DNA of 64,000 bases from Scyliorhinus canicula. Lineage: Eukaryota. The DNA is taken from NCBI RefSeq assembly GCF_902713615.1, contig NC_052161.1:2252892-2316891 (forward strand). Direction: 5' to 3'. Positions 745-52,000 of this stretch are shown piece after piece; position 1 is the stretch's first letter, and each line of letters begins with the position of its first letter. Below the pieces are notes generated by a model. The model had not been told where the DNA came from. It ran no database searches and saw nothing but the letters and a program-made list of their open reading frames with translations. Both the position numbers and the translations under genes were made by a program.

Positions 745-1110
745 TCAACTTGGGATGTAGTCACACTGACCTGATCTCCATTGTGTCCCAAGCTGCTGTG
801 GGAGGCGAGGGAGGGGATTGCAGGGGATCTGACCCAAATTTTGAATTCCTCTCTGTCTACCGGGGAGGTGCCAGAGGACTTGAGAACAGCTATTGTGGAA
901 TATTCTGAAGGAGAGAATCGATCTCAACTTGGAGAAGCAAGGTTTGATCAGGAATAGTCAGCATGGCTTTGCCAGAGGGAGGTCATACCTGACAAATATG
1001 ATTGAAATTTTTGAGGTGGTGACCAGGTGTATAGACGAGGGTAGGGCAGTTGATGTAGTTTACATGGATTTCAGCAAAGCCATTGTCAAGGTCCCACACA
1101 GGAGACTGAT
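745..1110 (+). mobile_element. CR1 LINE ORF2 fragment
   Basis: IRNSQHGF..GRS.LTN / AVDVVYMDFSKA RT motifs. Confidence 0.8.
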
Positions 1111-1300
1111 AAAAGGAAAGTGGAGGAATCAATTGGACCAGGAACAGCAATGGAGGAAGAAAGTTGTTATTCTACTAAATTACCCCTTAGTGGCAAAAGG
1201 TGTACAGGTTAGGTAGATTAAGTGGGTCAAGGTAGAGTGCTCTTTGAGGGTCAGTGTGTCGATGGGCCAAAAGGTCTACTTTACACTGTCGGGATTCTAT

Positions 1301-3799: not shown

Positions 3800-3829
3800 C
3801 TGAAATGATAGGAGCAGTTGTTACCAATC

Positions 3830-4945
3830 AATAATTGTGTGCACAATCCGCTTTACCACCTTACCCTGGATCCCATGTGCATTTACCTTCAATATCAGTC
3901 TCCCATGTGGGATCCTGTCAAAGGCTTTGCGGAAATCCATATAAACTATATCAACGGCACTACCCTCATCTATACACTTGGTTACATGCTCAAAAATATC
4001 AATCGTATTAATTAGACACGAGCTCCCTCTGACAAAGCCATGCTGACTATTCCTGATCAAACCTTGCCTCTCCAAATGGAGATTGATTCTCTCCTTCAGA
4101 AATTTCTCCTGGTCTGTAGTTCCCTGGCTTATCTCTACAACACGACTTCAATAGTTGGACCACATTTACGGTTCTCCGGTCCTTTGGCACCTCACGTGGC
4201 CGGAGGAATTAAAAATTTGGATCAGAGCCCCTGCAATCTCCTCCCTCACTTCCCACAGCAACCTGGGACACAATTAGTCTGAATCTGGAGATTTGTCCAC
4301 TTTTAAGTGCGCCAACGCCTCCAATACCTTGTCACTTCCTGTGCCATTTTGCTCAAGAACCTCCCAGTCTTTCCCAGAGTTCCATATCCACCTCCTCACT
4401 CTCTTGGGTGGAGACAGATATGAAGTATTCATTCAACACTCTACCAATGTCCTCTGGCTCCACCCACAGATTGCCCCCATGGTCCCTAAATGACCCAACT
4501 CTTCCCCTGGATATCCTCTTCCCATTGATATACTTAGAAATGGGATTTCCCTACTTTTACCAGCCAGAGCTTTCTCATATCTTTGCTCTCCAATTTCTTC
4601 AGCTCCATCCTGCACTTCACTAATGCCTAAAGGTCTCTCTTTTCCTTCTCATTATATCCTGAATGTCTCTGGTCATCCATGGTTCTCTGGGTTTGTTACT
4701 CCTTCCTATTATTCTCGAGGGAACATGTTGGGTCTGTATCCTCCCCATTTCCTTTTTGAACACCCTCCACTGCTCTTCTGTAGATTTCCCCACAGTAACC
4801 TTTTCCTGTTTACCTTGGCCAGATCCTGCTTTATTTTACTAAAATCCACTCTCCCCCAATGCAAAACCTTTTTTTGCAACTTGTCTATTTCTTTGTCCAT
4901 AGCAAACTTAAATTGCACTATGTTGTGGTCACTGTCACCAAAATG
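3830..4945 (-). mobile_element. Decayed CR1 ORF2 fragment
   Basis: SQHGF, YMDF.KAFD and SDHN motifs across broken frames. Confidence 0.8.
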
Positions 4946-10922: not shown

Positions 10923-11708
10923 AAAACTGCACCTCACCTGCGGCCCTCAAAGAGGGCAGAAAAAAAGCAAAAAGGGGACAGAGAGAGAGAGAGAGAAAGG
11001 AAGAGGATACTGAGAAAGAATGAGAAAGAGAGAAGCACTAATATACATGAAGAGTATTTTCCAATTCCAAACTAAATCCTCAGCTTTGGTTAGGCAGCCA
11101 ATGAGTTGGAAAGCTTGCGTTGAGCAATGCAGCCGCACAGGAATAAGCAAATTCCAGAAAAATTATCCGAGGACAGGCGACTGGGCAGTCCACAGCTCCC
11201 AACACCTGGATGCTAGACCTGGAGCGAGGGGAGACTCGATCAGGAATATTAAATCCTGAACAGCATTGACAAGGTGGATGCGGGAAGGACGTTTCCTGGT
11301 GTGGGCGAGTCCAGAACTAGGAGGCACTGTTTTAAATGACGGGTCCACATTTAGGACATTCTCGGAGGTATTGGTGACTTTGGAACTGTCAGCCTCAGAA
11401 TGTGGTGGAGGCCGGTGACTGGGGAGGGGTTGAAATTTTAAAGATGGAAGTAGATAGATTCTCATTCGGCAGAAAAATCTGTGATTATCGGGGGTTGACG
11501 GAATGTAGAATTGGAAATACTATCAGGTGAATGGCAGAGCCGCCTCGAGGGGCCGAATGGTCTCCTGCTCCTATTCTGCATGTTCATATATTCACGGTTC
11601 AGAAATAGAGATACAGTTTGCCATCCGTTCCTTTCTGCTCCATGGCTGACTGTGCTGCTGACTGAGAGTATGACAGTGAGGATTACAGTATTACCGTGTG
11701 GGACTTAC

Positions 11709-11832
11709 CTCGATTTCTCCTCTTGATGTATTCCTGGGCTTTCTCTTGCGAGAGGAAAGCTTTTGTGGCCTTGACTCCAATATCGACCAGATACCCGTGG
11801 TCCTCAACACTGGACACACAGCCAGAGAGTAG
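11709..11832 (-). CDS. PDCD11: PDCD11 exon ([20 protein letters not shown]...)
   Basis: 124 nt, ctgcag/GTAAGT, EDHGY motif of RRP5 S1 repeat. Confidence 0.93.
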
Positions 11833-12659
11833 CTGCAGGTACAGGGGGAGATAGAGGAGAGGAGCACTCAGTACACAATACCAGAGGCCACATTCAGGGG
11901 AATAACAAACGGAACAATTGAAACAAACCAAAACAGATTCTGAATATTTGTCTCTCTTTCCTTCATCCTTAGTATTGAGTGGCACTGGAGTAACACCCAG
12001 GCCACAGATAATCCCCAGCCGCCACTCCCTGGCCTTCATAAGAAAAGGGATGTTAAATCTGTCCCACCCCTCCAGCTCCAGCCGTTTTTTTAAACTTAAA
12101 TAGTTTCAGGGTCACCAGAATATCCTCCAGCTTTATTGAGGGAACCATAAGATTTGAGAGAGGTCTGTCAACATTTCATGGAGAGAAATCCTAAAGGGTT
12201 CCCTCCAGCTCCACCTTCAGGAATTAAAGATTCTCAGGCTGGATAGAGGGGAAAAGCTGGTGGGATCCGTTTCCTGGAGCGAGCTCCAGCAGAGGTGAAG
12301 CAAAATGAATCCTTCCTGGCTCTGCAGAACATTCCAGAACAGTCAGCACCAATCAGCATCGAGTATCAGCAAAAGCCTGACAATTGAGCCAGCTCGCTGA
12401 CCACCAGCCAAGTCCATCAGCTATGCTATCACTGATTGCCCTTGAATCTGCTGAGCCATAATATGAACAGCTCTTTGCAACCTGCCTTGCCCGAGAGCAC
12501 AAGTCAATCCTCAGTTTACTAGCCACTAAAATTAAAGCTGAACTGCATCTTAAAGCATAGGGCCCATTAATTGTCCACGCACAAAAATTGTAATAAAACA
12601 GAAATTCCAAACGGAAAACAACAAAGAGACAAACAGGGATTAACAGGACGATCCTTACA

Positions 12660-13569
12660 CTCGCCATGCAGTGCCCCAGGAGGCCATGCCAACTCGCAGT
12701 GCCCCACTCACCATGCCAGCTCAGCGCCCCACTCACCATGCCAGCTGTGCCCCACTCAATGCCAGCTGTGCCCCACTCACAATGCCAGCTCTGTGCCCCA
12801 CTCACCATGCCAGCTCAGCGCCCCACTCACCATGCCAGCTCAGCGCCCCACTCACCATGCCAGCTCAGCGCCCCACTCACCATGCCAGCTGTGCCCCCAC
12901 TCACCATGCCAGCTCAGCGCCCCACTCACCATGCCAGCTCAGTGCCCCACTCACCATGCCAGCTCTGTGCCCCACTCACCATGCCAGCTCTGTGCCCCAC
13001 TCACCATGCCAGCTCTGTGCCCCACTCACCATGCCAGCTCTGTGCCCCACTCACCATGCCAGCAGTGCCCCACTCACCATGCCAGCAGTGCCCCACTCAC
13101 CATGCCAGCTCTGTGCCCCACTCACCATGCCAGCTCGCAGCGCCCCAGGAGACAGTGCCCCACTCACCATGCCAGCTGTGCCCCACTCAATGCCAGCAGT
13201 GCCCCACTCACCATGCCAGCAGTGCCCCACTCACCATGCCAGCTCAGTGCCCCACTCACCATGCCAGCTCAGCGCCCCACTCACCATGCCAGCTGTGCCC
13301 CACTCACCATGCCAGCTGTGCCCCACTCACCATGCCAGCTGTGCCCCACTCACCATGCCAGCTGTGCCCCACTCACCATGCCAGCTGTGCCCCACTCAAT
13401 GCCAGCTGTGCCCCACTCAATGCCAGCTGTGCCCCACTCAATGCCAGCTGTGCCCCACTCAATGCCAGCTGTGCCCCACTCAATGCCAGCTGTGCCCCAC
13501 TCACCATGCCAGCTCGCAGTGCCCCAGGAGACAGTGCCCCACTCACAATGCCAGCTGTGCCCCACTCAC
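12660..13569 (-). repeat. 21-25-bp minisatellite made of the PDCD11 exon/donor junction
   Basis: unit AGCTGGCATG|GTGAGTGGGGC. Confidence 0.95.
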
Positions 13570-13731
13570 CATGCCAGCTCGCAGCGCCCCAGGAGACAGT
13601 GACTTGTTTACATCTTTCGGATTAATGGAGAGTTTCAAGCTGTGGTGGCTTGCTTTGGTCTTTCCGAGTTCAGAGACAGTGCACCGTACGACCATACCAG
13701 CACTGTACAGGTCTGAGAGAGCAGTCAGATC
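13570..13731 (-). CDS. PDCD11: PDCD11 exon (DLTALSDLYSAGMVVRC...LSINPKDVN...RAGM); most 5' exon visible
   Basis: 162 nt, cccag/GTGAGT, phase 0-0. Confidence 0.9.
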
Positions 13732-14495
13732 CTGGGTTTGGGTTCGAATAAAACGGAACAGGTCAATGAGCAGAAAGCAGCACAGACACAGAAACCAAAA
13801 CCTCAGCAGCATTTACAAAACTCAAGCAGAAATTCCCCTCCCCCCATTACCTCTACTGACCTGCCTGAGACCCGTTCTCTCTGTGAGGCAGCTGGGGAAT
13901 ATACAGCCCCTACTGCCGCTGTTTACAAGGCTGCAGCTTAAATCACATTTAGCCACCTGGCTGTGTCACAGTAACTGTCACTGGGTACTCACCAGTTTAC
14001 AATCATCACTTGTGTTTTACACACCCTTTATTAACCTTCCTTCACAACCAAAATGTTTTCTGCCGGCTTAAAAGTAGAATTTGCTGCACTGGCTCAGGAT
14101 AACCTTCTCTGTCACAAATTGGTGTGTAGCATCTTCTCGATATCTACCCCATTGAACCTTTTCATAGTTTAAAAACTCTCCAACAATTCACCACTCCACT
14201 TTCTCAATAGTTGAGGAAAGATGCCCAGTTGGTTCAGTCTTTCCTGACAATCTTGCTGAGCTGGCCCAGTTTTGAAGCTAATTCTAGAGGACGGTTTGAA
14301 AATCTCACTCTGAGCAGCTCTGATTAGTTGCTGATTTGTTTAGTGTTGATGTCAGGCAGATTGTTGTGGCTTCACCTCAGTGTGCACACTGGTGGGATGT
14401 TCACATGGTGGAGAATGTAGTGAGAGGAGAACACGCTGATTAACAAACACCTTTCCAGGCAGTTAACACAGAGTTAACCACCACGGTGCAAACAA

Positions 14496-15148: not shown

Positions 15149-15648
15149 NNNNNNNNNNNNNNNNNNNNNNNNNNNNNNNNNNNNNNNNNNNNNNNNNNNN
15201 NNNNNNNNNNNNNNNNNNNNNNNNNNNNNNNNNNNNNNNNNNNNNNNNNNNNNNNNNNNNNNNNNNNNNNNNNNNNNNNNNNNNNNNNNNNNNNNNNNNN
15301 NNNNNNNNNNNNNNNNNNNNNNNNNNNNNNNNNNNNNNNNNNNNNNNNNNNNNNNNNNNNNNNNNNNNNNNNNNNNNNNNNNNNNNNNNNNNNNNNNNNN
15401 NNNNNNNNNNNNNNNNNNNNNNNNNNNNNNNNNNNNNNNNNNNNNNNNNNNNNNNNNNNNNNNNNNNNNNNNNNNNNNNNNNNNNNNNNNNNNNNNNNNN
15501 NNNNNNNNNNNNNNNNNNNNNNNNNNNNNNNNNNNNNNNNNNNNNNNNNNNNNNNNNNNNNNNNNNNNNNNNNNNNNNNNNNNNNNNNNNNNNNNNNNNN
15601 NNNNNNNNNNNNNNNNNNNNNNNNNNNNNNNNNNNNNNNNNNNNNNNN
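15149..15648. other. Assembly gap (500 N) flanked by poly-G/G-rich sequence
   Basis: run of N. Confidence 1.
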
Positions 15649-22640: not shown

Positions 22641-22842
22641 CTGAGTAATGTAAGGTCCCAAATTGTTAACAAATACATCATAGTAACTCTCCACCCACTA
22701 TGTTCCTGGCCCCAGGGAGAGACAGTCCAGCTTCATTAAAGTCTATCTGTACAAAGTTCAGTACCGATTGTCAAAATGCAGATGTTTTAGAAAAGCTCAG
22801 ACAAACGTGGTCGGGCACATTCAGTGATATGAAGAAAGACTC

Positions 22843-23732
22843 AGGGTCTGTACGTACTGCAGGGCCTGTACGTACTGCAGGGTCTGTACGTACTGCAGGG
22901 TCTGTACGTACTGCAGGGCCTGTACGTACTGCAGGGCCTGTACGTACTGCAGGGCCTGTACGTACTGCAGGGTCTGTACGTACTGCAGGGCCTGTACGTA
23001 CTGCAGGGTCTGTACGTACTGCAGGGCCTGTACGTACTGCAGGGCCTGTACGTACTGCAGGGCCTGTACGTACTGCACGGTCTGTACGTACTGCAGGGTC
23101 TGTACGTACTGCAGGGCCTGTACGTACTGCAGGGTCTGTACGTACTGCAGGGTCTGTACGTACTGCAGGGCCTGTACGTACTGCAGGGTTCTGTACGTAA
23201 TGCAGGGTCTGTACGTACTGCAGGGCCTGTACGTACTGCAGGGTCTGTACGTACTGCAGGGTCTGTACGTACTGCAGGGCCTGTACGTACTGCAGGGTCT
23301 GTACGTACTGCAGGGTTCTGTACGTACTGCAGGGTCTGTACGTACTGCAGGGTCTGTACGTACTGCAGGGTTCTGTACGTACTGCAGGGTCTGTACGTAC
23401 TGCAGGGTCTGTACGTACTGCAGGGCCTGTACGTACTGCAGGGTCTGTACGTACTGCAGGGCCTGTACGTACTGCAGGGTCTGTACGTACTGCAGGGCCT
23501 GTACGTACTGCAGGGCCTGTACGTACTGCAGGGCCTGTACGTACTGCAGGGCCTGTACGTACTGCAGGGCCTGTACGTACTGCAGGGTCTGTACGTACTG
23601 CAGGGCCTGTACGTACTGCAGGGCCTGTACGTACTGCAGGGCCTGTACGTACTGCAGGGCCTGTACGTACTGCAGGGTCTGTACGTACTGCAGGGTTCTG
23701 TACGTACTGCAGGGTCTGTACGTACTGCAGGG
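22843..23732. repeat. 18-bp minisatellite (tctgtacgtactgcaggg)n, about 49 units
   Basis: direct tandem repeat. Confidence 0.97.
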
Positions 23733-23832
23733 TATCAGGAGGGTGGAAGTGAAGAAGATATTTCACCAAGATATGGAGTCCATTCATATCAATGTAGTCA
23801 TTGAAATGGAAAAATGAAGCTGAATTGCTGAG

Positions 23833-24211
23833 TCACAACCCCACACTCACCCTGCCACTCGATCGTGACCCCACATTCGCACATTCACCCGTGCCACTCG
23901 ATTGTGACCCCACATTCACACACTTACTTTGCCACTAGATCATGACCCCACATTCGCACATTCACCGTGCCACTCGATTGTGACCCCACATTCGCACACT
24001 CGCCGTGCCACTCGATTGTGACCCCACATTCATACACTTACTTTGCCACTATTGTGACCCCACTCACGCACTCTGCCACTCGATCGTGACCCCACATTCG
24101 CACTCACCATGCCACTCGATCGTGACCCCACATTCGCACACTCACCGTGCTACTCGATTGTGAGCCCACTCACTCTGCCACTCGATCGTGACCCCACATT
24201 TGCAAACTCAC
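23833..24211 (-). repeat. ~38-bp minisatellite made of the TAF5 exon 7/donor junction
   Basis: unit GGTCACGATCGAGTGGCACG|GTGAGT... Confidence 0.92.
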
Positions 24212-24376
24212 CGTGCCACTCGATCGTGACCTCCTGAAATGAAGTAGTAGCCGTACGGAGAAAACTGTGTATCCCACACTGGGTAGTTATGTCCTTTGTA
24301 GCCGACGAGGCAGGTGAAGGTCTGCAGACTCCAGAGTCTCACTGTGCCATCCTCTGAGCTGGACAGCAGATAATTT
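24212..24376 (-). CDS. TAF5: TAF5 exon 7 (NYLLSSSEDGTVRLWSL...GGHDRVAR); not in ORF track
   Basis: 165 nt, phase 2-2, GTGAGT donor. Confidence 0.93.
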
Positions 24377-24820: not shown

Positions 24821-25190
24821 ATAAGACCATAAGACATAGGAGTGGAAGTAAGCCATTCGGCCCATCGAGTCCACTCCGCCATTCAATCATGGCTGATGGG
24901 CATTTCAACTCCACCTACCAGCATTCTCCCCGTAGCCCTTAATTCCTCGCGACATCAAGAATTTATCTATCTCTGCCTTGAAGCCATTTAGTGTCCCGGC
25001 CTCCACTGCACTCCGCGGCAATGAATTCCACAGGCCCACCACTCTCTGGCTGAAGAAATGTCTCCGCATTTCTGTTCTGAATTTACCCCCTCTAATTCTA
25101 AGGCTGTGCCCACGGGTCCTCGTCTCCTCGCCTAATGGAAACAGTTTCTTTGCGTCCACCCTTTCTAAGCCATGTATTATCTTGTAAGTT
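24821..25190 (-). mobile_element. CR1 3' end
   Basis: TRGHSL..R.FFSQRVV.LWNSLP motif plus short-repeat tail. Confidence 0.8.
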
Positions 25191-25539
25191 CCCGTCTGAG
25201 GTGCATGCACAGTTTCCTGCACGGTGATGTGAAAGATCCCATACCACGATTCTGAGTGCTCCAACCCATGGCACTGCCAATACCAATCCCCCAACCATCA
25301 CTAAATAAAGCTAATCTATGATCAAGTTACTGCTATCAGTGAGAGCCTGTTGTGTGAATGTTTCAAACACACCAATAATTATTACAATTCAGAACACTTC
25401 AGGGGGTGCGAAGCACTTGGGGATGTCCCAGGGTCATGACAGGAGCTACGGAAATGAAAGTTCTTTCTGACCAGTGCCTGGTCTGTTCATTTTGTTCGAA
25501 ACAAAGACGTTTACTGGTTTCCAAGTAGCTGCTTCTTAC

Positions 25540-43749: not shown

Positions 43750-46700
43750 GAGCCCCACAATGCTCAAATCCCCATACCCCACAATGCCCAGGCCCTAATA
43801 CCCCACAGTGCCTCAACCCCTATACCAGGCTATGCCTGAACCCTAATACCCCAATATGCCCGAACCCCAATACCACACAATCCCTGAACCCTCAAACCCC
43901 AATATGCCTGAACCCCAATACTTCACAATGCCTGAACCCCAATACCCCACACCTAAACCCCAATACCCCACAACACCCAAACCACAATATCCCACAATGC
44001 CTGAACCCCAATACCCCACAATGCCTGAACCCCAATACCCCACAAATGCCTGAACCCCAATACCCCACAACTGAACCTCAATACCCCACAATGCCTGAAC
44101 CCCAATACCCCACAATGCCTGAACCCCAATACCCCACAATGCCTGAACCCCAATACCCCACAATGCCTGAACCCCAATACCCCACAATGCCTGAACCCCA
44201 ATACCCCACAATGCCTGAACCTCAATACCCCAGAATGCCTGAACCCCAATACCCCACAATGCCTGAACCCCAATACCCCACAACTGAACCCCAATACCCC
44301 ACAATACTGAAACCCTAATACCCCACTGCACCCGAACCCCAATACCCCACAGCACCCGAACCCCAATACCCCACAGCACCCGAACCCCAATACCCCACAA
44401 TACCCAAATCCCAATACCCCACAATACCCAAACCCCAATACCCCACAATACCTGAACCCCAATACCCCACAATACCTGAACCCCAATACCCCACAATACC
44501 CGAACCCCAATATCCCACAATACCTGAACCCCAATACCCCACAATACCCGAACCCCAATATCCCACAATACCAAACCCCAATACCCCACAGCACCTGAAC
44601 CCAATACCCCACAACACCCAAACCCCAATATCCCACAATACCCAAACCCCAATACCCCACAATACCCGAACCCCAATACACCACAATACCAAACCCCAAT
44701 ATCCCACAATACCTGAACCCCAATACCCCACAACACCCGAACACCAATACCCCACAATAACCGAACCCCAATACCCCACAACACCTGAACACCAATACCC
44801 CACAATACCCAATACCCCAATACCCCACGATACCCGAACCCCAATACCCCACGATACCCGAACTCCAACATCCCATAATACCCCGGAACCCAATACTCCA
44901 CAATACTGAAACCCCAATACCCCACAATACCCGACCACCAATACCAACAATACCTGAACCCCAATACCCCACAATCCCAAACCCCAATACCCCACAATGC
45001 CCAAACCCCAATATCCCACAATATCCAAACCCCAATACCCCACAATACCCGAACCCCAATACACCACAATACCAAACCCCAATACCCCACAGCACCTGAA
45101 CCCCAATACCCCACAACACCCAAACCCCAATATCCCACAATACCCAAACCCCAATACCCCACAATACCCGAACGCCAATACACCACAATACCAAACCCCA
45201 ATATCCCACAATACCTGAACCCCAATACCCCACAATACCCGAACTCCAATACCCCACAATAACCGAACCCCAATACCCCACAACACCCGAACACCAATAC
45301 CCCACAATACCCAATACCCCAATACCCCACGATACCCGAACCCCAATACCCCACGATACCCGAAGTCCAACATCCCATAATACCCGGAACCCAATACTCC
45401 ACAATACTGAAACCCCAATACCCCACAATACCCGACCACCAATACCAACAATACCTGAACCCCAATACCCCACAATCCCAAACCCCAATACCCCACAATG
45501 CCCAAACCCCAATACCCCACAATACATGAACCCCAATACCCCACAATAACCGACCCCCAATACCCCACAATACATGAACCCCAATACCCCACAATAACCG
45601 ACCCCCAATACCCCACAATACCCAAACCCCAATACCCCACAGCACCCAAACCCCAATACCCCACAATACCCAAACCCCAATACCCCACAATACCAAACCC
45701 CAATACCCCACAATACCTGAACCCCAATACCCCACAATGCCCAAATCCCAATACCCCACAATACTGAAACCACAATACCCACAACAGAACCCCAATACCT
45801 CATAATACCCAAACCCCAATACCCCACAATACCCGAACCCCAATACCTCATAATACCCAAACCCCAATACCCCACAATACCCGAACCCCAATATCCCACA
45901 ATGCCTGAACCCCAATACTCCACAATACCCAAATCCCAATACCCCACAATACCCAAATCCCAATACCCCACAACAGAACCCCAATACACCACAATACTGA
46001 AACCCTAATACCCCACAGCACCCAAACCCCAATACCCCACAACACCCAAATCCGAATACCCCACAATACCCAAACCCCAATACCCCACAACAGAACCCCA
46101 ATACACCACAATACTGAAACTCTAATACCCCACAGCACCCGAACCCCAATACCCCACAACACCCAAACCCCAATATCCCACAATATCCAAACCCCAATAC
46201 CCCACAATACCCAAACCCCAATACCCCACAATACCCGAACCCCAATACACCACAATACCAAACCCCAATACCCCACAGCACCCGAACCCCAATACCCCAC
46301 AACACCCAAACCCCAATATCCCACAATACCTGAACCCCAATACCCCACAATGCCCAAATCCCAATACCCCACAATACTGAAACCCCAATACCCACAACAG
46401 AACCCCAATACCTCATAATACCCAAACCCCAATACCCCATAATACCCGAACCCCAATACCCCACAATACCCGAACCCCAATACCCCACAATAACTGAACC
46501 CCAATAGTCCACAACACCCGAACCCCAATACCCCAAAATAGCTGAATCCCAATACCCCACAGCCCCCAAACCCCAACACCCCACAACTGAACCCCAATAC
46601 CTCACAACACCTGAACCCCAATACCCCACAATACTGAAACCCAATACCCCACAATACCCAAATCCCAATACCCCACAATGCCCGAACTCCAACACCCCAT

Positions 46701-47868
46701 AATACCCGAACCCCAATACCCCACAATAACCGAACCCCAATACCCCACAATACCTGAACCCCAATACCCTACAACATCCGAACCCCAATACCCGACCCCC
46801 AATACCAACAATACCCGAACCCCAATACCCCACAATACCAAACCCCAATATCCCACAATACCTGAACCCCAATACCCCACAATACCAAACCCCAGTATCC
46901 CACAATGCCCAAACCCCAATACCTCACAACACCCGAACCCCAATACCCCACAATACCCAAACCCCAATACCCCACAATACCAAACCCCAATATCCCACAA
47001 TACTGAAACCCCAATACCCCACAATGCCTGAACCCCAATACCCCACAATACCCGAACCCCAATACCCCACAATACCCGAACCCCAATACCCCACAATACC
47101 CGAACCCCAATACCCCACAATACCCGAACTCCAATACCCCACAATACCCAAATCCCAATACCCCACAATACCCGAACCCCAATACCCCACAATACCCGAA
47201 CCCCAATACCCCACAATACCCAAACCCCAATACCCACCATGCCCAAAGCCCAATACCTCACAACACCCGAACCCCAATACCCCACAATACCCGAACCCCT
47301 ATATCCCACAATACCCAAACTGCAATACCCCACAATACCCAAACCCCAATACCCCACAATACCCAAACCCCAATACCCCACAATACCCAAACCCCAATAC
47401 CCCACAGTACCCAAACCCCAATACCCCTCAGCACCCGAACCCCAATACCCCACAGCACCCAAACCCCAATACCCCACAACACCCAAACCCCAATACCCCA
47501 CAGCACCCGAACCCCAATACCCCACAACACCCAAACCCCAATACCCCACAGCACCCAAACCCCAATACCCCACAGCACCCAAACCCCAATACCCCACAAC
47601 ACCCAAACCCCAATACCCCACAGCACCCGAACCCCAATACCCCACAATACCCAAACCCCAATACCCCACAACACCCGAACCCCAATACCCCACAATACCC
47701 GAACCCCAATACCCCACAATACCCAAACCCCAATACCCCACAATACCCAAACCCCAATACCCCACAATACCCAAACCCCAATACCCCACAATACCCAAAC
47801 CCCAATACCCCACAATACCCAAACCCCAATACCCCACAATACCCGAACCCCAATACCCCACAATACCC
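43750..47868. repeat. ~22-bp C-rich minisatellite, 4.1 kb
   Basis: ccccaataccccacaatacccgaa-type unit. Confidence 0.97.
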
Positions 47869-49089: not shown

Positions 49090-52000
49090 TGTTGGAGATG
49101 CACTCGTATGGCTAGTCCAGTCCAGATGTTGAGAAGGTGCGGGGCTGGAGGAGGTTTTGTGGGTGAAGGTGGAGGCAGGGTTTTTGTGAGGGGTCAGGGT
49201 TGCGGGTGTTGGCGATGGCTCTGCTCTTTTTGCCCCGGGGAGGTATCCGGGGAGTCCGGTCGTGGTGGTCATGCTGAAATTATGGAGGCAGTTTCGGCTG
49301 CGCTTTAAGTTGGGAGCAGCATTGAAACTGATGCTGATTCGGGGGAACAATGGGTTTGAGCCCGGGAGGGTGGATGGGAGGTTTCGGGGATGGGAGGAGT
49401 GAGGGGCGGTGGAAAGAAAGGATCTGTTCCTCGAGGATGGTTCTGGAGGAGGGGGTGGGGTGTGGGTGCTGGAGGAGGGGGTGTGAGGTACTGGAGGAGG
49501 GGGTGTGGGTGCTGGAGGAGGGGGTGTGGGTGCTGGAGGAGGGGGTGTGGGTGCTGGAGGAGGGGGTGTGGGTGCTGGAGGAGGGGGTGTGGGTGCTGGA
49601 GGAGGGGGTGTGGGTGTGGGTGCTGGAGGAGGGGGTGTGGGTGCTGGAGGAGGGGGTGTGGGTGACGTGAGGGAAAGGTTTCAGTTACATGCTGGTTGGG
49701 ATTTTGTGAAAATGGTCTGTGTGACCTTTCCAGTGACACCGCCCCCTCTTTGCTGGAGGGGGTGATGTCAGTGATGGGGTTGGGGGGGCGGGGGTCATCT
49801 CGGCGATTTATGGGAGGATTTTGGAGGAGGATAGGGCATCTCTGGAGGGGGTTAAGGCCAAGTGGGAGGAGGAGCTGGGGATGGCGCTGGAGGAGGGGGT
49901 GGGGTGTGGGTGCTGGAGGACGGGGTGTGGGTGCTGGAGGAGGGGGTGGGGTGTGGGTGCTGGAGGAGGGGGTGGGGTGTGGGCGCTGGAGGAGGGGGTG
50001 TGGGTGCTGGAGGAGGGGGTGGGGTGTGGGTGCTGGAGGAGGGGGTGGGGTGTGGGCGCTGGAGGAGGGGGTGTGGGTGCTGGAGGAGGGGGTGGGGTGT
50101 GGGTGCTGGAGGAGGGAGTGGGGTGTGGGTGCTGGAGGAGGGGGTGGGGTGTAAGGTGCTGGAGGAGGGGGTGGGGTGTGAGGTGCTGGAGGAGGGGGTG
50201 GGGATGGTGCTGGAGGAGGGGGTGGGGTGTGGGTGCTGGAGGAGGGGGTGGGGTGTGGGTGCTGGAGGAGGGGGTGGGGTGTGGGTGCTGGAGGAGGGGT
50301 GGGGTGTGAGGTGCTGGAGGAGGGGGTGGGGTGTGAGGTGCTGGAGGAGAGGGTGTGGGTGCTGGAGGAGGGGGTGGGGTGTGGGTGCTGGAGGAGGGGT
50401 TGTGGGTGCTGGAGGAGGGGGTGTGGGTGCTGGAGGAGGGGGTGTGGGTGCTGGAGGAGGGGGTGTGGGTGCTGGAGGAGGGGGTGTGGGTGCTGGAGGA
50501 GGGGGTGTGGGTGCTGGAGGAGGGGGTGTGGGTGCTGGAGGAGGGGGTGGGGATGGTGCTGGAGGAGGGGGTGGGGTGTGAGGTGCTGGAGGAGGGGGTG
50601 GTGTGTGGGTGCTGGAGGAGGTGGTGGGGTGTGAGGTGCTGGAGGAGGGGGTGGGGTGTGAGGTGCTGGAGGAGGGGGTGTGAGGTGCTGGAGGAGGGGG
50701 TGGGGTGTGGGTGCTGGAGGAGGGGGTGTGGGTGCTGGAGGAGGGGGTGTGAGGTGCTGGAGGAGGGGGTGGGGTGTGAGGTGCTGGAGGAGGGGGTGGG
50801 GTGTGAGGTGCTGGAGGGGGGGTGTGAGGTGCTGGAGGAGGGGGTGGGGTGTGGGTGCTGGAGGAGGGGGTGGGATGTGAGGTGCTGGAGGAGGGGGTGG
50901 GGTGTGAGGTGCTGGAGGAGGGGGTGGGGTGTGGGTGCTGGAGGAGGGGGTGGGGTGTGAGGTGCTGGAGGAGGGGGTGGGGTGTGAGGTGCTGGATGAG
51001 GGGGTGTGAGGTGCTGGAGGAGGGGGTGGGGTGTGGGTGCTGGAGGAGGGGGTGTGGGTGTGGGTGCTGGAGGAGGGGGTGGGGTGTGAGGTGCTGGAGG
51101 AGGGGGTGTGAGGTGCTGGAGGAGGGGGTGGGGTGTGAGGTGCTGGAGGAGGGGGTGGGGTGTGAGGTGCTGGAGGAGGGGGTGTGAGGTGCTGGAGGAG
51201 GGGGTGGGGTGTGAGGTGCTGGAGGAGGGGGTGGGGTGTGAGGTGCTGGAGGGGGGGTGTGAGGTGCTGGAGGAGGGGGTGGGGTGTGGGTGCTGGAGGA
51301 GGGGGTGGGGTGTGAGGTGCTGGAGGAGGGGGTGTGGGTGCTGGAGGAGGGGGTGTGGGTGCTGGAGGAGGAGCTGGGGATGGTGCTGGAGGAGGGGGTG
51401 GGGTGTGAGGTGCTGGAGGAGGGGGTGTGGGTGTGGGTGCTGGAGGAGGGAGTGGATGCTGGAGGAGGGGGTGTGGGTGCTGGAGGAGGGGGTGTGGGTG
51501 TTGGAGGAGGGGGTGGGGTGCTGGAGGAGGGGGTGTGGGCGCTGGAGGAGGAGGTGGGGTGTGAGGTGCTGGAGGAGGGGGTGTGAGGTGCTGGAGGAGG
51601 GGGTGGGGTGTGGGTGCTGGAGGAGGGGGTGGGGTGTGGGTGCTGGAGGAGGGGGTGTGGGTGCTGGAGGAGGGGGTGTGAGGTCCTGGAGGAGGGGGTG
51701 TGGGTGCTGGAGGAGGGAGTGGGGTGCTGCGGAGAATGAATGCCCCAACCCCATGTGCGAGGCTGGGTTTGATACAGTTAACGGTCGTGCACAGAGCACA
51801 GCTGATGAAATTGGGGATGAGCCGGCAGTTGGAGGGAGTGAAGGATATTTGTGGGCAGTGTGGGAGGGGCCCGGACAATCACACACACGTGTTCTGGTCC
51901 TGCCTAAAGCTGGAGAAGTTTTGGGGGGTATCTTTCAGCACCATGTCTGCGATCCTGCGCATGGATTTAGAGCTCAGTCCCCTGGGGGCCATATCCGGGA

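What the first reader, a model, noticed from the sequence alone, without database searches (positions are those of the whole stretch)
12660..13600. Minisatellite built from a 5' splice site: dozens of decoy donors behind a PDCD11 exon
Seen: the ~0.9-kb array is tandem copies of the exon end plus intron start (AGCTGGCATG|GTGAGTGGGGC; 21/23/25-nt units). Longer units at about 13136-13157 and 13514-13535 copy further into the exon. Most units keep a donor identical to the real one at 13569. Read-through hits TGA at 13545-13543 and the nearest decoy shifts the frame, so only the first donor gives intact protein. Inference: either strict first-donor selection among roughly 30 equal U1 sites, or a copy-number-tunable NMD/U1-loading element in an essential ribosome-biogenesis gene.
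Basis: partly seen in the sequence, partly recalled or inferred. Interest (0 to 1): 0.8.

Follow-up and report, generated by a model that had tools for sequence, protein, structure and literature searches.

The report
Splice-donor minisatellite in shark PDCD11 intron
The end of a PDCD11 exon plus its splice donor has been copied about 35 times in tandem into the intron; RNA reads show only the first donor joined, as in the known human F7-type boundary minisatellites, so it is probably a tolerated by-product of a repeat-rich genome.

Summary
On the minus strand, a PDCD11 (RRP5 homologue) exon at 13731-13570 is followed by 35 tandem units of 21-42 nt plus two decayed copies (13563-12659). There are 28 extra GTGAGT donors, and 26 of them match the real donor over all nine positions. 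Every decoy would give a frameshift or an in-frame TGA.

New here:
- The whole unit derives from the last 21 nt of the exon plus only 6 nt of intron.
- The seven units nearest the real donor are donor-poor; only one is perfect.
- RNA data show a single joint, 13570 to 11832, in 8 raw reads and one 3.8-kb RNA contig. No decoy joint and no intron reads appear in poly(A) RNA.
- A related organism's DNA carries the start of the array.

This is a new member of a known kind: minisatellites whose first unit spans an exon-intron boundary (human F7, IFI6, CBS, LMNB2, PDGFA; PMC1557585). In F7 only the most upstream donor is used.

The window is 31% minisatellite and holds a second such array behind a TAF5 exon. 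This scan had already noted similar arrays elsewhere in this genome (LAMTOR1, FPGT and others). A tuning role through NMD or U1 loading has no support but is not excluded below about 30% (reads), perhaps a few percent (contigs).

The parts
13570..13731 (-). PDCD11 (RRP5 homologue) coding exon, 162 nt, phase 0, ending ...GGGGCGCTGCGAGCTGGCATG
   Evidence: Translates without a stop. Joined to the next exon, its translation matches PDB 1wi5 'RRP5 protein homolog' at E=4e-19. RNA depth about 15 in X21 and 143 in X1.
13564..13572 (-). Authentic 5' splice site ATG|GTGAGT (GT at 13569-13568), the only donor seen joined in RNA
   Evidence: Joint 11832 to 13570, skipping 1737 nt, with ends CT..AC on the plus strand (GT..AG on the minus strand). 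Seen in 8 reads with 5 starts in X21 and in one contig at depth 143 in X1.
12706..13563 (-). Minisatellite of 35 units (21/23/24/25/42 nt, register GGGG...GAGT) holding 28 decoy GTGAGT donors, 26 of them with the identical 9-mer
   Evidence: TRF, unit parse, donor list with frames and stops, and 29 hits against 0.01 expected.
13394..13563 (-). Donor-poor zone: of the first seven units, unit 1 has ATT|GT (-1 G>T), unit 2 is a 42-nt unit with a perfect donor, and units 3-7 are five identical 21-nt units without GT
   Evidence: Fisher test, 1 of 7 against 25 of 28 perfect donors, p=3e-4. The five 21-nt units are probably one mutational event that was then amplified, so the test overstates the case.
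13543..13545 (-). In-frame TGA, formed by the GTGAGT of decoy 1 read in the shifted frame; it ends read-through and lies in every product of decoys 2-28
   Evidence: The ORF ends at 13543. A stop at codon 62 is found for every decoy product except decoy 1.
13499..13540 (-). First 42-nt unit, re-copying the last 30 nt of the exon (CTGTCTCCTGGGGCACTGCGAGCTGGCATG) plus GTGAGT
   Evidence: A contig from organism B DNA is identical over 13481-13563.
13120..13161 (-). Second 42-nt unit, with the exon-like G variant (GGGGCGCTGCGAG)
12659..12705 (-). Two decayed terminal copies (GGGGCACTGCGAGTTGGCATGG and CCTCCTGGGGCACTGCATGGCGAGT). The last has GC instead of GT and runs straight into unique intron (GTAAGGATCG...)
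   Evidence: This fixes the right edge of the seed at intron position +6.
11833..12658 (-). Unique remainder of the intron, with acceptor AG at 11834-11833
   Evidence: Depth is zero in X21 apart from a few reads (depth 0.5) on the dispersed repeat at 12319-12373. Organism B DNA contigs cover 11907-12226.
11709..11832 (-). Next PDCD11 exon, 124 nt ([20 protein letters not shown]...)
23841..24231 (-). Related case in the same window: the last 20 nt of a TAF5 exon plus 18 nt of intron (38-nt unit), real junction plus 10 more diverged copies. The real donor GT is at 24211
   Evidence: Sequence, parse. The exon matches human TAF5 residues 567-610 at E=1.6e-37. Donor use was not measured.

Best explanation
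This is an exon-intron boundary minisatellite.

Origin (inferred): a 27-nt seed, the last 21 nt of the PDCD11 exon plus the first 6 nt of the intron, was duplicated in tandem. It then expanded by slippage or unequal exchange into about 35 units that lie entirely inside the intron. Blocks of identical neighbouring units show recent local amplification.

Splicing (shown): the spliceosome joins only the most upstream, exon-attached donor to the acceptor at 11833, so the whole array is removed with the intron.

Why the first donor wins (inferred): by analogy with human F7 intron 7, the choice is positional. It would come from 5'-to-3' 'oriented scanning' and/or exon definition from the upstream acceptor, not from repression of the copies.

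Function (inferred): the array is most likely neutral or slightly harmful and tolerated. Selection probably acts only against use of the nearest decoys, which are the ones that have decayed. It exists because this genome region produces minisatellites at a very high rate.
For: Origin:
- Every unit aligns to exon -21..-1 plus GTGAGT with small internal deletions, and the last copy runs into unique intron right after GAGT.
- Runs of 5, 5, 4 and 3 identical units are present.

Splicing:
- There is a single joint, 13570 to 11832, in 8 of 8 junction reads in X21 and in a 3807-nt RNA contig at depth 143 in X1. Array depth is zero in both raw poly(A) runs.
- The array RNA folds less stably than shuffled sequence (z=+3.99), so the decoys are not masked by structure.

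Precedent:
- PMC1557585 describes the class (F7, IFI6, CBS, LMNB2, PDGFA). For F7 it shows with 50 constructs that identical pseudo-sites are functional but only the most upstream one is used.

Genome context:
- 21 arrays cover 31% of the window, and a second boundary array follows a TAF5 exon.
- First-stage notes of this scan list further donor arrays and two acceptor arrays in the same genome. These notes are unchecked.
- Shark small chromosomes are reported to be rich in simple tandem repeats (PMC10620051).

The array is real:
- RNA contigs match specific unit combinations with 0-2 differences.
- An organism B DNA contig is identical over 83 nt spanning units 1-3.
Against: - Sensitivity is low. 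Eight junction reads bound decoy use only to below about 31%, and NMD would remove decoy products.
- RNA run X1 holds short array contigs at depth 3-21 while the unique part of the intron has depth 0. Traces of pre-mRNA or DNA seen only where words are multi-copy could explain this. Low-level use of distant decoys would give the same pattern.
- In IFI6 and CBS the two nearest pseudo-sites are used (PMC1557585), so strict silence is not universal in this class.
- Two boundary arrays among about 15 locus-specific arrays in one window is more than a naive positional null predicts (0.13-0.35 expected).
- Copy number and polymorphism were not verified.
Confidence: 0.78

Rival explanations
1. Regulatory unproductive splicing. 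A fraction of transcripts uses decoy donors, and all such products carry a frameshift or the in-frame TGA and are degraded by NMD. The number of intact decoys would then set PDCD11 output.
For: - 26 decoys carry the same strong 9-mer as the real donor, and all decoy products are out of frame or stopped.
- In IFI6 and CBS the proximal pseudo-sites are used (PMC1557585).
- Array contigs appear in RNA run X1 without the unique intron.
Against: - No decoy joint was listed in two raw runs or in the contig run, while contigs at depth 3-5 were kept in X1 against exon depth 143.
- The nearest decoys, the ones used in IFI6 and CBS, are weakened or lack GT here.
- The same kind of array follows unrelated genes, which argues for a by-product.
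- F7 pseudo-sites are silent.
Confidence: 0.08
2. U1-loading element. The 28 U1-binding sites recruit U1 snRNP to the intron without being spliced, and affect transcription, premature polyadenylation (telescripting), intron retention (decoy-type) or chromatin retention.
For: - There is a dense array of sites with seven consecutive pairs to the U1 5' end, from -1 to +6 (own knowledge of U1 pairing applied to the sequence).
- Decoy splice sites can drive intron retention in other genes (PMC6097662, PMC7373989).
Against: - No intron retention was seen: depth is zero across the intron in X21, apart from a few reads on the dispersed repeat at 12319-12373, while exon depth is about 15.
- Nothing distinguishes this array from the many other arrays in the window.
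- No test of U1 binding was possible.
Confidence: 0.06
3. Junction-targeted mutational process. Exon-intron boundaries in this genome are preferred seeds for tandem duplication, for example through breaks linked to polymerase pausing or R-loops at G-rich 5' splice sites. Boundary arrays would then be truly enriched, not merely tolerated.
For: - Two of about 15 locus-specific arrays in this window span a donor, against 0.13-0.35 expected.
- At least seven donor arrays were noted by first readers in about 1351 windows (unchecked).
- The sense strand of the array is G-rich (GC skew -0.29 on the plus strand).
Against: - The window came to attention because of the array (ascertainment).
- A rough genome-scale estimate gives the same order of magnitude as the number noted. 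This is my own arithmetic on assumed densities (about 5 arrays and 3 donors per window), not a measurement.
- Acceptor arrays and a U12-type, not G-rich, donor array are also noted, which fits random seeding better than a donor-motif bias.
Confidence: 0.06
4. Assembly artefact. The array, or its length, is produced by mis-assembly of repetitive reads.
For: - Copy number was not verified by long reads.
- A 500-N stretch lies 1.6 kb away.
- One X1 contig suggests a different unit order (loose end at 13113).
Against: - Independent RNA contigs match several specific unit-variant combinations exactly, and a DNA contig from another organism is identical over units 1-3.
- The ordered block structure with private variants is typical of real minisatellites.
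Confidence: 0.02

Closest known systems
Human F7 intron 7 37-bp VNTR (Borensztajn et al. 2006, PMC1557585)
   Same: The first monomer spans the exon-intron boundary, so the authentic donor is followed by identical pseudo-donors. Only the most upstream donor is used, and no RNA structure explains the choice.
   Different: F7 has 5-9 repeats of 37 bp (4 nt of exon plus 33 nt of intron) with a weak donor, UGG|gugggu. Here there are about 35 units of 21-25 nt, made of 21 nt of exon plus 6 nt of intron, with a strong ATG|GTGAGT donor. The nearest units have lost or weakened their donor. The function of the decoys after loss of the first donor was tested for F7 but not here.
Human IFI6 (6-16) intron 2 and CBS intron 13 boundary minisatellites (as reviewed in PMC1557585)
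   Same: Many reiterated donors lie behind the real one (25 pseudo-sites in IFI6; 15-20 repeats in CBS).
   Different: [quoted passage not shown] Here no decoy use was detected, and the most proximal decoy carries a -1 G>T change.
Human LMNB2 (100-bp unit) and PDGFA intron 4 (81-bp unit) boundary minisatellites (PMC1557585)
   Same: Boundary-spanning arrays in which only the authentic donor is used.
   Different: Their units are much longer, so decoys are far apart. Here decoys sit every 21-25 nt.
Decoy exons that promote intron retention (SF3B1 and others; PMC6097662, PMC7373989)
   Same: Unproductive splice sites inside an intron.
   Different: Decoy exons have both a 3' and a 5' splice site, are conserved, and cause measurable intron retention. 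Here there are only donors and no retention was seen in poly(A) RNA.
Other boundary arrays noted by this scan in the same genome (LAMTOR1, FPGT, ARL16, ZPR1, 'alpha2' exon, TAF5; acceptor arrays at ERGIC3 and LBH)
   Same: Same construction: an exon edge plus its splice site amplified into the intron.
   Different: Those are AI notes. Only the TAF5 case was checked here. For LAMTOR1 the earlier follow-up stated that donor use could not be measured. Here it was measured for PDCD11.

Membership tests
Exon-intron boundary minisatellite (F7 IVS7 type) | Tandem array in an intron whose first monomer spans the exon-intron boundary | tested here: met
   Units align to exon -21..-1 plus intron +1..+6. 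The array starts right at the real junction and ends in unique intron.
Exon-intron boundary minisatellite (F7 IVS7 type) | The authentic donor sequence is reiterated as identical pseudo-sites | tested here: met
   26 decoys carry the identical 9-mer ATGGTGAGT, and 2 more carry ATTGTGAGT.
Exon-intron boundary minisatellite (F7 IVS7 type) | Under normal conditions only (or mainly) the most upstream donor is used | tested here: met
   The only joint is 13570 to 11832, in 8 of 8 reads in X21 and in a contig at depth 143 in X1. The bound on decoy use is below about 31% from reads.
Exon-intron boundary minisatellite (F7 IVS7 type) | Pseudo-sites are functional and take over, next in line, when the upstream donor is inactivated | not testable with these tools
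   This needs minigene mutagenesis, as done in PMC1557585.
Exon-intron boundary minisatellite (F7 IVS7 type) | Copy-number polymorphism (VNTR) | tested here: inconclusive
   One X1 contig implies a different unit order (loose end at 13113) and a 2-nt indel at 13480. Organism B has a 23-nt unit where the reference has a 21-nt unit. Short contigs cannot give copy number.
Regulated unproductive splicing / NMD switch | Stop-containing isoforms detectable in RNA | tested here: not met
   No decoy joint was listed in X20, X21 or X1. Sensitivity is limited and there were no NMD-inhibited data.
Regulated unproductive splicing / NMD switch | Conservation of the element across species | tested here: inconclusive
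   Organism B DNA shares units 1-3 exactly. Its distance from organism A is unknown, and more distant species could not be examined.
Decoy-exon type intron retention element | Measurable retention of the host intron in poly(A) RNA | tested here: not met
   Depth is zero over 11866-13521 in X21, apart from a few reads on the dispersed repeat at 12319-12373, with exon depth about 15.

The most novel reading that the evidence does not exclude
Boundary-spanning minisatellites may be genuinely enriched at splice junctions in this shark genome. That would point to a transcription- or splicing-linked duplication process at exon edges. Alternatively, distant decoys may be used at a low, copy-number-dependent rate that NMD hides, which the array-only contigs in RNA run X1 do not exclude. 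Either way the genome would offer a natural library, with tens to hundreds of identical donors per locus, for testing how the spliceosome picks the first donor.
Probability: 0.13. Interest if true: 0.65.

Novelty: new member of a known kind. Interest (0 to 1): 0.3.

Why it matters
How the spliceosome picks one donor among identical ones is still debated. The candidates are positional scanning, exon definition, and proximity to the acceptor.

This locus is a natural test with 26 perfect, strong copies at 21-25-nt spacing, far more than the 4-8 in the F7 model. It sits in an essential ribosome-biogenesis gene of a cartilaginous fish. The RNA data indicate the first-donor rule holds there too, which extends the rule beyond mammals.

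For annotation, such arrays can mislead gene predictors and read aligners. For evolution, they show that a genome with runaway minisatellite formation can place arrays on splice junctions without breaking genes. The locus itself is probably not functional.

Tried and rejected
- RNA structure hiding the decoys: rejected. The first 360 nt fold less stably than shuffled sequence (z=+3.99).
- A dispersed repeat family that happens to touch the exon: rejected. The unit occurs only at this locus in the window, and the long units carry 30 nt of this exon.
- Other arrays in the window abutting exons: the flanks of nine other locus-specific arrays were inspected, and none showed an obvious exon-edge copy.
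- Pfam on single exons: the 54-aa and 41-aa exon translations gave no hit by themselves. The PDB sequence search gave the identification instead.
- The exon upstream of 13731: its end is visible as loose ends of RNA reads but was not found in the readable window. It may lie in the N run at 15149-15648, which by instruction I did not try to fill.
- A search for a shark or catshark genome paper stating minisatellite content gave only a general statement on tandem repeats in shark small chromosomes.
- No splice-site strength score (MaxEnt or consensus value) was computed, because no matrix was available. Strength is argued from pairing to U1 only.
- The organism's name is coded in the run tables. 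'Small-spotted catshark' comes from earlier follow-up notes of this scan and was not verified independently.

Full report
**Observation**

Read on the minus strand, window 13731-13570 is a 162-nt open exon (DLTALS...SPGALRAGM). Joined to the next exon (11832-11709), its translation matches the S1 domain of the human 'RRP5 protein homolog' (PDCD11), PDB 1wi5, at E=4e-19. It also matches fungal Rrp5. An ORF further downstream in the gene carries the Pfam RRP5 S1 domain.

The exon ends ...GGGGCGCTGCGAGCTGGCATG|GTGAGT, with the donor GT at 13569-13568. The intron is 1737 nt, GT..AG, and ends at 11833.

Directly behind the donor, TRF reports one array (12699-13514, 35 copies, 90% matches). A 20-mer across the junction occurs 29 times, all on this strand between 12701 and 13578, against 0.01 expected from shuffles.

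- Unit sizes are 21, 23 and 25 nt.
- Two longer units reach further into the exon.
- The TGA is at 13545-13543.
- The nearest decoy shifts the frame by 23 nt.
- Only the first donor gives an open product.

**Anatomy**

Cut in the register GGGG...GAGT, the array has 35 units (13563-12706). Two decayed copies follow (12705-12659), and then unique intron resumes with GTAAGGATCG.

Every unit can be derived from the last 21 nt of the exon plus only the first 6 nt of the intron, with internal deletions of 2-6 nt. For example, the 25-nt unit GGGGCGCTGAGCTGGCATGGTGAGT is the 27-nt seed minus CG. So the 'GGGGC' behind the real donor is exon-derived, not ancestral intron.

Two 42-nt units (13540-13499 and 13161-13120) re-copy 30 nt of the exon. 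Runs of 5, 5, 4 and 3 identical neighbouring units show recent local amplification. This is the usual signature of slippage or unequal exchange.

There are 29 GTGAGT sites:
- the real donor;
- 26 decoys with the identical 9-mer ATG|GTGAGT;
- 2 decoys with ATT|GTGAGT.

Seven units (ATTGAGT) have lost the GT through a 2-nt deletion. Decoy 1 adds 23 nt and shifts the frame. All later decoys include the in-frame TGA, which is the GTGAGT of decoy 1 read in the shifted frame.

Unit 1 has -1 G>T, units 3-7 have no GT, and only unit 2 is perfect. Among the other 28 units, 25 are perfect (Fisher p=3e-4). The five 21-nt units are probably one event that was then amplified, so this is only a hint of selection against proximal decoys.

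**RNA and DNA evidence**

I laid two raw poly(A)-selected RNA runs (X20, X21), the contigs of one RNA run (X1), and the DNA contigs of a related organism B (X33) on 11650-13790.

The only joint listed is 11832 to 13570. It skips 1737 nt, with ends CT..AC on the plus strand, which is GT..AG on the gene strand. It is seen in 8 reads with 5 start points in X21. It is also seen in one 3807-nt RNA contig at depth 143 in X1 that carries both exons exactly joined.

No joint from any decoy was listed. Depth over the array is zero in both raw runs, while exon depth in X21 is about 15. So neither decoy use nor intron retention was seen.

The limits are real:
- Eight of eight reads bound steady-state decoy use only to below about 31%.
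- NMD would remove decoy products.
- Contigs drop rare variants.

In X1, contigs at depth 3-5 were kept while the exon stands at 143. A decoy-joined form above a few percent would therefore probably have been assembled. This is an inference about the assembler.

One thing is unexplained. X1 holds short (53-72 nt) array contigs at depth 3-21, while the unique part of the intron (11866-12585) has depth 0. Traces of pre-mRNA or DNA seen only where words are multi-copy would explain it. Low-level use of distant decoys would give the same picture.

The array is not an assembly invention. Several X1 contigs match particular unit-variant combinations with 0-2 differences. A 95-nt DNA contig of organism B is identical over 13481-13563, covering unit 1, the first 42-nt unit and the start of unit 3. 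That contig then continues with ATTGTGAGT where the reference has the 21-nt form ATTGAGT. This suggests the 21-nt units arose from ATT|GT units by a 2-nt deletion. Copy number was not verified.

**What it is not**

The array RNA is less structured than shuffled sequence (z=+3.99), so the decoys are not hidden in hairpins. The unit is not a dispersed family, because it occurs only here in the window.

**Context**

The window is extraordinarily rich in minisatellites. There are 21 arrays with period of at least 10 and at least 3 copies, covering 31% of the readable sequence. Five of them belong to one dispersed 69-bp family.

About 11 kb upstream on the same strand lies an exon identical in all but a few residues to human TAF5 567-610 (E=1.6e-37). 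It ends ...GGTCACGATCGAGTGGCACG|GTGAGTTTGCAAATGTGG. This 38-nt junction is repeated 10 more times (24231-23841), in a more diverged state.

First-stage notes of this scan list further donor arrays in the same genome: LAMTOR1, FPGT, ARL16 with a U12-type donor, ZPR1, and an 'alpha2' exon. They also list two acceptor arrays, ERGIC3 and LBH. Two earlier follow-ups call the species the small-spotted catshark and class the LAMTOR1 and FPGT arrays as a known kind. These are unchecked AI notes and I use them only as leads. The organism name is coded in my run tables.

Published shark genomes show simple tandem repeat content rising on small, gene-rich chromosomes (PMC10620051).

**Chance**

With about 15 locus-specific arrays, 20-30 donors and units of about 27-35 nt, a naive positional null predicts 0.13-0.35 donor-spanning arrays in this window. 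Two are seen (P about 0.01-0.05).

The window came to attention because of them. With more than a thousand windows read, one such window is expected. On my own rough assumptions for an average window (about 5 arrays and 3 donors), the expectation over about 1350 windows is of the order of ten. That is the same order as the number noted.

I therefore see no need for a junction-specific mechanism, but I could not run the proper genome-wide test.

**Comparison with what is known**

Borensztajn et al. [quoted passage not shown] Their examples are:
- F7 intron 7: 37 bp, 5-9 repeats;
- IFI6 intron 2: 25 pseudo-sites, with the two nearest used;
- CBS intron 13: 15-20 repeats, with two pseudo-sites used;
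- LMNB2: 100 bp;
- PDGFA intron 4: 81 bp.

With 50 F7 constructs they showed three things. The identical pseudo-sites are functional. [quoted passage not shown] Neither structure nor nearby intronic elements explain this. They call it 5'-to-3' oriented scanning, with a contribution from exon definition.

The PDCD11 array meets the defining features I could test: a boundary-spanning first unit, identical reiterated donors, and use of the first donor. It differs in degree:
- It has more copies of a stronger donor, with seven consecutive pairs to U1 from -1 to +6 (my own knowledge of U1 pairing).
- Its units are much shorter and made mostly of exon sequence.
- It has a decayed zone next to the real donor.

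**Mechanism and verdict**

Shown:
- The array exists.
- It derives from this junction.
- The first donor is the one joined in mature RNA.
- Decoy products would be non-functional.

Inferred:
- Origin by tandem duplication and slippage.
- Positional first-donor choice, as in F7.
- Neutrality.

The second, a tunable NMD or U1-loading element, has no support but is not excluded at low levels.

This is a new member of a known kind, and this scan had already found the kind at other loci of the same genome.

Noticed in passing
window 23841-24231 (minus strand): A second boundary minisatellite. The last 20 nt of a TAF5 exon plus 18 nt of intron (38-nt unit) is repeated 10 more times, at about 80% identity. 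The first decoy has lost the -1 G (CAGA|GTGAGT). Donor use was not measured.
   Followed up: partly
window 1-64000: 31% of the window is minisatellite: 21 arrays with periods of 12-69 nt. A 69-bp unit recurs at five places (2143, 3008, 17834, 29431, 55725) and looks like a dispersed family. A 4.1-kb 24-nt array lies at 43753-47868 and a 2.3-kb G-rich array at 49457-51729.
   Followed up: partly
window 15149-15648 (N run) and RNA loose ends at 13733: RNA reads and a contig continue upstream of the exon into a sequence not present in the readable window (0 matches). The upstream PDCD11 exon may lie in the 500-N stretch. By instruction I did not try to fill it.
   Followed up: no
window 12586-13521, RNA run X1: Short array contigs at depth 3-21 are present in an RNA run, while the unique part of the same intron (11866-12585) has depth 0. 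This may be word multiplicity from traces of pre-mRNA or DNA, or low-level use of distant decoys. It is unresolved.
   Followed up: no
window 13586 and 13618: Two exon variants appear in RNA run X21: G>A at 13586 in 6 of 8 reads (Ala>Val on the gene strand) and C>T at 13618 in 5 of 10 reads. They are likely polymorphisms between individuals.
   Followed up: no
window 12319-12373: A short stretch in the PDCD11 intron is matched by several organism B contigs and by RNA reads that run on into unlike sequence on both sides. It is probably a dispersed repeat fragment.
   Followed up: no
window 893-1216, 3821-4075, 24905-25294: ORFs with reverse-transcriptase-like motifs (for example ...VDIVYMDFRKAFDRIPHGRL...) sit in the introns. 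They look like decayed LINE-type retroelement fragments, judged by eye only.
   Followed up: no
window 22842-23733: An 18-nt array of 49 copies (95% matches) lies about 100 nt downstream of the TAF5 donor array in the same intron, so two unrelated minisatellites sit back to back.
   Followed up: no
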